A model generated the notes under the pieces. The model saw nothing but the letters and a program-made list of their open reading frames with translations, was not told the origin of the DNA and ran no database searches. Below are positions 21,341-21,855 of a DNA stretch of 64,000 bases, piece by piece. The DNA is taken from assembly GCA_037379345.1 (NCBI GenBank), contig CM074515.1, forward strand, positions 36,957,743-37,021,742, written 5' to 3'. This DNA is from Perna viridis (Eukaryota). The translations under genes and the position numbers were made by a program. How positions within the stretch are numbered: position 1 is the stretch's first letter; each line of letters begins with the position of its first letter.

Positions 21341-21419
21341 GCCCCGTGCAGGTCCGGGTGTTAAAAGAATAAGCCTGCAGCAGCGCTAAGCTTGTCGTAA
21401 AAGGCGACTAAATAGTGCT
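21341..21419 (+). ncRNA. Predicted structured RNA head of the retroposon (pseudoknot plus interrupted stem-loop); candidate ribozyme or promoter module
   Basis: CCCG(21343-46)/CGGG(21355-58) stem whose loop TGCAGG can pair with CCTGCA(21374-79). Outer stem AGCGCTA(21382-88)/TAGTGCT(21413-19) encloses the GTCGT-AAAAG-GCGAC hairpin followed by TAAA. Function is not demonstrated. Confidence 0.5.
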
Positions 21420-21855
21420 CAGAAACCTAGCCGGGGGCTAGGCGCTCTGCCCACAGAGCAACTGGGATGTGTGTCCCAGGTGGTGGAATGGGGTACCCCT
21501 GGCATGTTACATGCTGGGGTTGTCAGGCTATAATACGGAAAACCTGACCACAAACCATAGTTGTGCACCGTGTTGGGAAAGATGCCACGTTCCTCGCACG
21601 TTAAAGAACCCTGCTGTGGTATTCGATAGGAGTAGGAACCTTTGCGCTCCGCCACAGGAGGCTAAATTGCCCTACCTTACCCATCCCCCTTGTTCTAGTG
21701 GCAATCAAAATTTGTCGACCCTATTATCCTTGTGACCCATCCTTTTTTTTTTCTTCATTTCATGTTCATTTTATCATCCATTTCATGTTCATTGTCTGAA
21801 TATAGCTGAAATATTGCTGCTCGGACGTTAAACCCCAACAAACAAAAACAAACAA
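21341..21855 (+). mobile_element. Full-length SINE-like non-autonomous retroposon, copy 1 (Vingi/Ingi-like head, Deu/Nin-like core, (CAAA)n tail)
   Basis: 13-bp TSD ACAACTGAGCCCA at 21328-21340 and 21856-21868; GC-rich against the AT-rich host; simple-repeat 3' tail; closely similar to 22845-23238 and 49528-50048. Confidence 0.92.

What the first reader, a model, noticed from the sequence alone, without database searches (positions are those of the whole stretch)
21341..21855. Chimeric SINE-like retroposon with no Pol III head: Vingi/Ingi-like 5' module, Deu/Nin-like core and simple-repeat tail
Seen: three copies with 11-13 bp TSDs and (CAAA/CAAT)n tails, one 5'-truncated, which are hallmarks of target-primed reverse transcription. 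No A-box/B-box or tRNA-like head is visible. Established (recalled, not searched): the head CCCGTGCAGGTCCGGG...AGAATAGGCC...GTCGTAAAAGGCGACTAAA resembles the conserved 5' terminus of Vingi (Ingi-group) LINEs, and described bivalve CORE/V/Meta/Deu SINEs are normally tRNA-headed. Inference: a LINE 5' module replaced the tRNA head of a conserved-domain SINE, giving an element that is independent of Pol III and could be released from host intron transcripts like this one.
Basis: partly seen in the sequence, partly recalled or inferred. Interest (0 to 1): 0.85.

Follow-up and report, generated by a model that had tools for sequence, protein, structure and literature searches.

The report
Abundant SINE lacking a tRNA head
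This is one copy of a very abundant, recently active 515-bp retroposon that is copied by a LINE enzyme but has no tRNA-type promoter at its front; mollusc elements of this type ('LP-SINEs') were described in 2016, so it is a new member of a known but little-studied kind.

Summary
The window has three copies: two full-length and one 5'-truncated, with 11-13 bp target-site duplications and (CAAA)n or (CAAT)n tails. Genome-wide, a 24-mer of the head occurs 6,875 times and a 24-mer of the tail 13,999 times. The 40 best copies are 92-100% identical (39 of them 97% or more). Of 43 full-length copies surveyed, 42 begin GCC, 29 of them directly next to their duplication.

No tRNA, 5S, 7SL or ribozyme signal was found with ARAGORN, Rfam or A/B-box scans. 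Every young copy carries an internal run of 8-11 T, a strong Pol III terminator.

Matetovici et al. 2016 described mollusc 'LP-SINEs' whose first ~70 bp resemble LINE 5' UTRs. Kojima 2018 described Vingi and RTE 5' modules in SINEs.

I could not test whether this head comes from a LINE.

RNA reads show the element in both orientations with a 2-5-fold sense excess. Many reads run through the 5' junction, and none pile up at base 1. This gives no support for release from host transcripts.

At least a dozen other first-stage notes flag the same element elsewhere in this genome.

Verdict: new member of a known kind, modest interest.

The parts
21330..21340 (+). Left target-site duplication of copy 1 (AACTGAGCCCA)
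   Evidence: Identical to 21858-21868.
21341..21415 (+). Head, about 75 nt. Starts with G1 of GCCCCGTG. No tRNA, 5S or 7SL likeness. Predicted to fold into stem-loops. Candidate LINE-type 5' module (unverified).
   Evidence: no Pol III head; fold z=-1.7, not significant; precise 5' end; literature.
21416..21470 (+). Linker with two strong local hairpins (element positions about 86-102 and 104-119)
   Evidence: Predicted fold. Always attached to the head in 59 copies.
21471..21555 (+). Possible vestige of a tRNA-derived region: A-box-like TGGTGGAATGG at element 141-151, no B box. The 5'-truncated copy 2 starts here.
   Evidence: A-box-like word, not significant; no tRNA call.
21556..21742 (+). 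Central body (core) of unknown family.
   Evidence: Conserved in all copies. No reference sequences available.
21743..21752 (+). Internal run of 10 T (8-11 T in all young copies), a strong Pol III terminator about 100 nt before the 3' end
21753..21793 (+). 3' region with an internal duplication (CATTTCATGTTCAT twice)
   Evidence: This region differs between subfamilies.
21794..21836 (+). Tail hairpin (outer stem GTCTGA/TCGGAC) plus GTTAAACCCC. Probable recognition module for the LINE reverse transcriptase.
   Evidence: fold; in the first 100 of 10,435 matches the stem pair is U-A 83, C-G 12, U.G 2, C.A 3; this module alone retroposes as a tail-only mini element.
21837..21857 (+). (CAAA)n-type terminal microsatellite
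21858..21868 (+). Right target-site duplication of copy 1
22845..23238 (+). Copy 2: 5'-truncated (starts at element position ~130), older subfamily, (CAAT)n tail, TSD CCCCAATAAAT
   Evidence: 89% identity.
49527..50048 (-). Copy 3: full length, older subfamily (90% identity), (CAAT)n tail, TSD CTCCTTTGTATG, tail stem in the C-G state

Best explanation
The element is a non-autonomous non-LTR retroposon of the LP-SINE type, about 515 bp long. It consists of a ~75-nt non-tRNA head, a structured linker, a body that may keep a vestige of a tRNA-derived region, an internal T run, a 3' hairpin and a (CAAA)n tail. Shown: it spreads by target-primed reverse transcription. A LINE enzyme nicks the target, primes on the (CAAA)n end, and copies the RNA up to a fixed first base, leaving 9-16 bp duplications. 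It has done so recently and on a large scale, with roughly 13,000 head-bearing copies and about 19,000 tails. Inferred: the 3' hairpin plus repeat is what the LINE reverse transcriptase recognises. Inferred: the template RNA is not a Pol III product. It is made either by Pol II from a promoter inside the head, as in LINE 5' UTRs, or as part of longer host transcripts. The head would then have been taken from a LINE 5' end by template switching, as proposed for mollusc LP-SINEs.
For: TSDs, microsatellite tails, 5' truncation and nested insertions. A precise 5' end: 42 of 43 full-length copies begin GCC, and in 29 the TSD lies directly against G1. Youth and abundance (pattern counts 6,875 and 13,999; 33 of 61 heads and 47 of 63 tails in held DNA carry the exact words). 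No Pol III signal. An internal run of 8-11 T in every young copy. A tail hairpin whose two subfamily-diagnostic changes are pairing partners: U-A 83, C-G 12, against 5 unpaired or wobble states. The hairpin plus repeat retroposes alone, with its own TSDs. RNA from the element is 2-5 times more abundant in sense than antisense in three stranded runs. Published precedent with the same architecture: 520-bp pectinoid elements with a 68-bp LINE-like head placed upstream of a tRNA-derived part, and LP-SINEs in Littorina, Haliotis, Ostrea and Saccostrea (PMC4758252).
Against: Homology of the head to any LINE 5' end was not shown here. Thirty RNase H-bearing LINE loci and one intact 1167-aa LINE carry neither the head nor the tail. 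No pile-up of read starts occurs at base 1, and at least 278-342 reads per run cross the 5' junction into unrelated flanks, so a head-driven unit-length transcript was not seen. There are no extra 5' G residues of the kind capped templates often leave. The predicted fold of the head is no better than shuffles (z=-1.7). Details differ from the described pectinoid family, which has a CT-rich spacer and a canonical AATAAA.
Confidence: 0.62

Rival explanations
1. It is a bipartite non-autonomous LINE: an internal-deletion derivative of one LINE that keeps that LINE's own 5' and 3' ends (like RIME/ingi, NARTc/L1Tc, Vingi-1_EE derivatives or Bov-A), with no SINE ancestry.
For: There is no small-RNA head. 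The precise 5' end and the tail hairpin are both typical of LINE termini. Such derivatives are known for RTE, Ingi, Vingi and R2 (PMC5786205). Deletion variants that join head to 3' body exist (L052 and L028; RNA joints).
Against: No LINE with either end was found in the DNA read, although only a small part of the LINE diversity was sampled. About 300 nt of body, with an A-box-like word and a copy that begins exactly there, resemble the SINE-derived middle of the published pectinoid elements.
Confidence: 0.17
2. It is an ordinary Pol III SINE whose tRNA-derived promoter has decayed beyond recognition or lies internally (around element positions 131-205). The first 130 nt would be a transcribed 5' extension.
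For: There is an A-box-like TGGTGGAATGG at element 141-151 that fits the relaxed consensus. Three consecutive hairpins follow it. Copy 2 starts 10 nt upstream of it with its own TSD. The pectinoid relatives keep a tRNA-derived part behind the LINE-like head.
Against: No B box lies at any plausible distance, and the A-box-like match is at chance level. There is no tRNA call at very lax thresholds. Pol III starts 10-20 nt upstream of an A box, not 140 nt, yet 42 of 43 full-length copies start at base 1. An internal run of 8-11 T would end Pol III transcripts before the tail that retroposition needs. Headless copies are rare: module counts are 61 head, 59 linker and 62 tRNA-like region.
Confidence: 0.08
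3. The head is a self-cleaving or otherwise processed RNA that cuts the element out of longer host transcripts at base 1, so the element needs no promoter.
For: The 5' end is precise, with no promoter motif found. LINE 5' ends of the R2, RTE, Ingi/L1Tc and LOA clades carry HDV-like ribozymes (PMC5786205). A loose HDV-like descriptor can be drawn: P1 pairs nt 1-7 with 148-154 and opens with a G1.U154 wobble, P3 is 136-138/144-146, and P2 is 129-135/161-167. Most element RNA is embedded in longer transcripts.
Against: No ribozyme family matches at E<=10, even on 236 nt. The descriptor also fits 4% of shuffles. It needs a 121-nt J1/2 insert and no P4, has a non-canonical P1.1 and J4/2, and competes with a stronger local hairpin. 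Junction-crossing reads are plentiful and there is no pile-up of 5' ends at base 1. The one divergent head (L052) is a single decayed copy, so there is no covariation support.
Confidence: 0.06

Closest known systems
[quoted passage not shown] 2016, PMC4758252)
   Same: Short (about 515-520 bp) TSD-flanked retroposons ending in short tandem repeats. The first ~70 nt are not tRNA-derived and sit upstream of, or replace, a tRNA-derived part. They are found in marine molluscs. The hexamer AATATA lies upstream of the repeats, as reported for Haliotis LP-SINEs. Pol II transcription is suspected but unproven.
   Different: Homology of this head to the Nimb-17_LMi, I-3_DR and RTE-9_CPB 5' UTR module could not be checked. 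The spacer here is not CT-rich, and there is no canonical AATAAA as in Chlamys. The genome (723 Mb, with every one of some 300 listed search hits on 15 of its 46 contigs) does not look like any host species named in that paper. That is my inference from recalled chromosome numbers and is not verified.
Bipartite non-autonomous LINEs (RIME/ingi, NARTc/L1Tc, Vingi-1_EE derivatives, Bov-A, WALLSI3; Kojima 2018, PMC5786205)
   Same: No ORF. The LINE-type 5' terminus is kept exactly. There is a LINE-type 3' recognition end, and the elements are probably Pol II transcribed.
   Different: Here a ~300-nt body of unknown, possibly SINE, origin lies between the ends, and the parent LINE was not found.
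tRNA-headed conserved-domain SINEs of bivalves (Meta/MESC, Deu/Nin, V, CORE; Nishihara 2016, PMC4824008; Martelossi 2024, PMC11481361)
   Same: Similar size, TSDs, (CAAA)n-type tails, tandem-like and nested arrangements, and high copy number.
   Different: Those start with a tRNA-derived head with A and B boxes; this element does not. The 2024 survey reported that every SINE it confirmed showed signs of tRNA-related origin, so elements like this one do not figure in it.
HDV-like ribozyme-headed LINEs (R2, RTE, L1Tc Pr77)
   Same: A structured ~70-80-nt 5' module that defines the first base of the element.
   Different: There is no match to any ribozyme model, no convincing double pseudoknot, and RNA reads cross the junction freely.

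Membership tests
SINE in the strict sense (Pol III-transcribed, small-RNA-derived head) | Head derived from tRNA, 5S rRNA, 7SL or snRNA, with an internal Pol III promoter (A and B boxes) | tested here: not met
   ARAGORN found none, even at an 80% threshold. Rfam found none at E<=10. There is no A+B box pair.
SINE in the strict sense (Pol III-transcribed, small-RNA-derived head) | No strong internal Pol III terminator upstream of the 3' end | tested here: not met
   All 29 young copies carry a run of 8-11 T at about element position 400.
LINE-dependent non-autonomous retroposon (SINE in the broad sense) | Variable-length TSDs, a 3' simple-repeat tail, 5'-truncated copies, no ORF, many dispersed copies | tested here: met
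   (no ORF of 150 aa or more in the window).
LP-SINE (Matetovici 2016) | The first ~70 bp are homologous to the start of a LINE 5' UTR (Nimb-17_LMi, I-3_DR, RTE-9_CPB) | not testable with these tools
   No Repbase or Dfam was available, and no supplements are held. No LINE with this head was found among 31 LINE loci.
LP-SINE (Matetovici 2016) | TSD-flanked short element with a non-tRNA 5' end and a terminal tandem repeat | tested here: met
LP-SINE (Matetovici 2016) | Body and/or tail shared with tRNA-headed SINEs of the same or related species | tested here: inconclusive
   Only an A-box-like vestige and one copy starting at element ~130 point that way. No separate tRNA-headed family with this body appeared in 281 kb.
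Deu/Nin or Meta/MESC conserved-domain SINE superfamilies | Central domain alignable to the published domain consensus | not testable with these tools
   The domain sequences exist only in figures and supplements that are not held. Word searches of the literature were blank or irrelevant.
Bipartite non-autonomous LINE | Both termini identical to those of one autonomous LINE in the same genome | tested here: inconclusive
   No match in 30 RNase H-LINE loci or in L061. Other intact LINE families listed could not be read.
HDV-like self-cleaving ribozyme | Nested double pseudoknot (P1, P1.1, P2, P3, P4) with a catalytic C, cleaving 5' of nt 1 | tested here: not met
   No Rfam hit. Only a loose descriptor fit, also found in 4% of shuffles and lacking P4 and a canonical P1.1. 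RNA reads cross the site.

The most novel reading that the evidence does not exclude
The exact 5' end is made by RNA self-processing, not by a promoter. Nucleotides 1-7 pair with 148-154 (opening with a G1.U154 wobble) and, together with 129-167, form an HDV-like double pseudoknot. The whole 121-nt head sits as an insert in J1/2. Copies embedded in any host transcript could then cut themselves free and be retroposed, making this a promoter-independent SINE.
Probability: 0.05. Interest if true: 0.8.

Novelty: new member of a known kind. Interest (0 to 1): 0.3.

Why it matters
SINEs are defined by Pol III heads. Elements that spread to more than 10,000 copies without one show that another way of making template RNA works at scale. 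The way proposed for LP-SINEs in 2016, a borrowed LINE promoter, has never been tested experimentally. This family is young (the best copies are 97-99% identical), very abundant and transcribed. That makes it a convenient system for asking which polymerase makes the template and what the conserved ~70-nt LINE-type 5' module does. It also matters for annotation: the 2024 bivalve SINE survey reported only tRNA-related elements, so a family covering roughly 1% of this genome could go unreported by surveys of that kind.

Tried and rejected
1. Finding the head donor or tail partner LINE in this genome failed. DNA searches with the whole element or the 80-nt head return only the best SINE copies. 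Thirty RNase H-LINE loci and one intact 1167-aa LINE with an (ACTT)n tail have neither end. I did not try to read more letters by another route.

2. The metagenome scan for diverged heads gave one contig with a 97% identical copy and nothing divergent.

3. Reference sequences could not be obtained from the literature. No supplements are held, the Kojima 2011 Vingi paper is not held, and sequence-word searches were blank or returned only primers.

4. Covariation in the head has no support. The one 75%-identical head (L052) seemed to keep helix 8-14/32-38 through paired changes, but it is a single decayed copy, so I dropped that argument. An nhmmer profile found no other diverged heads in 281 kb.

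5. The claim of a densely structured head is rejected. Fold z-scores are -1.7 for the head and -1.2 for the whole element, neither significant.

6. A recalled likeness of the head's TAAAAGGCGACTAAAT to the V-domain of fish SINEs could not be checked, and no other family with that word occurs in the held DNA.

7. The host-intron context of the window copy was not established. There is no ORF of 150 aa or more in the window and no RNA depth in the flanks.

Full report
OBSERVATION

The window holds three copies of one element.
- Copy 1 (21341-21855, +) is full length and flanked by AACTGAGCCCA.
- Copy 2 (22845-23238, +) begins at element position ~130 and is flanked by CCCCAATAAAT.
- Copy 3 (50048-49527, -) is full length and flanked by CTCCTTTGTATG.
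The tails are (CAAA)n in copy 1 and (CAAT)n in copies 2 and 3.

FAMILY SIZE AND AGE

The window is G000:C5:36957743-37021742 in a 723-Mb assembly of 46 contigs. A search with copy 1 gave 3119 first-look candidates. The 40 best were all full length at 92-100% identity, 39 of them at 97% or more.

Exact-word counts over the whole genome are as follows:
- 6,875 for a 24-mer of the head;
- 13,999 for a 24-mer of the tail;
- 10,435 for the 33-nt tail hairpin.
The reversed control patterns gave 0 in each case.

In the 281 kb of DNA I hold, 33 of 61 heads and 47 of 63 tails carry those exact words. This scales to roughly 13,000 head-bearing copies and 19,000 tails, or about 1% of the genome. Copies cluster and often insert into one another.

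ENDS

Of 43 full-length copies, 35 have an exact TSD of 9-16 bp, mostly 12-13 bp. In 29 of them the TSD lies directly against the first base, G1 of GCCCCGTG. Six copies have 1-3 extra bases between the TSD and the element, and these are not G-rich. The remaining eight show diverged TSDs or none. No full-length copy carries anything upstream of G1 inside its TSD.

IS THERE A POL III HEAD?

- ARAGORN finds no tRNA in the window, and none in the young consensus even at an 80% threshold.
- Rfam at E<=10 finds no tRNA, 5S, 7SL, snRNA or ribozyme, either on 2.2 kb or on the first 236 nt alone.
- An A-box-like TGGTGGAATGG lies at element 141-151. No B box follows it at 30-60 nt, and A-box matches of that quality occur in 63% of shuffles.
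- Every young copy has an internal run of 8-11 T about 100 nt before the 3' end. By established knowledge, such a run is a strong Pol III terminator. It would remove the tail that retroposition needs.

I conclude that the template RNA is most likely not a Pol III product.

THE 3' END

The last ~45 nt fold into a hairpin. Its outer stem is GUCUGA/UCGGAC in the young (CAAA)n subfamily and GCCUGA/UCGGGC in the older (CAAT)n copies.

Among the first 100 genome matches, the variable pair is U-A 83 times, C-G 12 times, U.G twice and C.A three times. Only about ten positions differ between subfamilies, and two of them are pairing partners. This points to selection on the stem, although linkage within subfamilies contributes to the association.

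The hairpin plus repeat also occurs alone as roughly 60-nt insertions. Two of the four carry their own visible TSDs, and all four begin at the base of the hairpin (L057, L016, L044, L043). The RNA reads show a matching set of loose ends at 21794. I infer that this module is what the partner LINE's reverse transcriptase recognises.

THE HEAD

The first 140 nt are predicted to form a chain of stem-loops. The energy is not better than shuffles: z=-1.7 for the head and z=-1.2 for the whole element.

One head that is only 75% identical (in L052) seemed to preserve a helix through paired changes. It is a single old copy with no relatives within 3 mismatches, so it gives no comparative support.

A loose HDV-like descriptor can be fitted. 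P1 pairs nt 1-7 with 148-154 and has a G1.U154 wobble. P3 is 136-138/144-146 and P2 is 129-135/161-167. However, it also fits 4% of shuffles. It needs a 121-nt J1/2 insert, lacks P4, and competes with a stronger local hairpin.

RNA

Three raw-read RNA runs of the same species label were laid on 21191-22005.
- The flanks of this copy have zero depth.
- The element has depths of several hundred to about 2,000.
- Reads whose first mate lies on the minus strand, which means sense RNA in most stranded libraries, are 2-5 times more numerous than the opposite class.
- 34-46% of laid reads run on into unlike sequence.
- At least 278-342 reads per run cross the 5' junction into heterogeneous AT-rich flanks.
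- No position, including 21341, shows a pile-up of read starts.

Most element RNA is therefore embedded in longer transcripts. The sense excess leaves room for some element-driven transcription, but a discrete unit-length RNA was not seen. There is no sign of efficient cleavage at base 1.

WHAT IS KNOWN

Matetovici et al. 2016 (PMC4758252) described exactly this idea.
- In scallops, 520-bp MESC-domain SINEs carry a 68-bp segment like the first 68 bp of the Nimb-17_LMi 5' UTR, placed upstream of the tRNA-derived part.
- In Littorina, Haliotis, Ostrea and Saccostrea, the same ~70-bp module replaces the tRNA head.
- In Saccostrea the module sits on a body with a partial Nin-DC domain shared with tRNA-headed SINEs.
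- They named these elements LP-SINEs, suspected Pol II transcription, and pointed to the ingi/L1Tc Pr77 promoter-ribozyme as a parallel.

Kojima 2018 (PMC5786205) showed Vingi and RTE 5' UTR pieces inside SINEs and reviewed bipartite non-autonomous LINEs. Nishihara 2016 and Martelossi 2024 cover the tRNA-headed bivalve SINEs. In the 2024 survey every confirmed element showed signs of tRNA-related origin.

Its attribution to Vingi rather than Nimb, I or RTE could not be tested here.

WHAT I COULD NOT DO

No repeat library was available, and no paper text or supplement holds the reference sequences.

The search for a LINE with this head or tail covered 30 RNase H-bearing LINE loci and one intact 1167-aa LINE, all negative. 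Further intact LINE families are listed.

The one metagenome scan returned a near-identical copy only.

VERDICT

The element is a real, very abundant and young LINE-dependent retroposon with no Pol III head. It fits the LP-SINE kind in every feature I could test; the defining homology of the head to a LINE 5' UTR remains untested.

Its architecture differs in detail from the described scallop family: the spacer is not CT-rich and there is no AATAAA. Every one of some 300 listed search hits lies on 15 of the 46 contigs. To my recollection, that number of large contigs does not match the host species named in 2016. I therefore rate it a new member of a known kind.

The same element has been flagged by at least a dozen other first-stage notes on other pieces of this genome, mostly as a 'ribozyme-headed SINE'. 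The results here speak against the ribozyme reading but do not exclude it.

Noticed in passing
L057:3096-3150 (-), L016:1395-1445 (-), L044:1-45 (-), L043:3303-3364 (-); window 21794-21857 is the matching part of copy 1: Tail-only 'mini' retroposons. About 45 nt of the 3' hairpin plus (CAAA)n occur alone. L057 and L016 carry their own TSDs (TTGAACCATGTTGA, GAATTTGTTGTCT). All four start at the base of the hairpin. RNA reads show 284-367 loose ends per run at 21794, and tail words are twice as frequent as head words genome-wide.
   Followed up: partly
L052:957-2500: An old deletion variant (head joined directly to the 3' body) is split by an antisense, 5'-truncated RNase H-bearing LINE fragment. 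Its head is 75% identical to the family consensus and unique in the genome within 3 mismatches.
   Followed up: yes
G000:C1:3.33-3.55 Mb (coordinates from pattern hits): A dense cluster of this SINE: about 30 head words and about 45 tail words within roughly 200 kb. Clustered nested and tail-duplicated arrangements also occur in L002, L026 and L043.
   Followed up: no
L061:2940-6440 (+) and the places listed: Several LINE families look intact and young. ORFs of 1167, 1186 and 1247 aa recur in several copies with identical RT scores. The 1167-aa family ends in an (ACTT)n repeat and is not the partner of this SINE.
   Followed up: partly
L062:5735-6113 (contig OGYZ01005649.1): A public metagenome contig holds a 97% identical copy of the first 378 nt of the element, presumably DNA of the same or a very close species in an environmental or gut sample. 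Runs labelled as invertebrate gut, marine, seawater and biofilm metagenomes also hold part of the stretch.
   Followed up: no
window 10881-11620, 2335-2642, 40156-41026, 4149-4595 with 41758-42234: Other repeats are present in the window: a 59/33-bp tandem array, a 22-bp tandem array, a ~325-bp three-unit array, and a ~160-bp repeat shared between two distant places. They are not related to the SINE.
   Followed up: no
window 21372: The window copy has A where 90-98% of RNA reads and the family consensus have G (AATAAGCC against AATAGGCC). In the predicted fold, this change breaks a C-G pair of the helix at element positions 8-14/32-38.
   Followed up: partly
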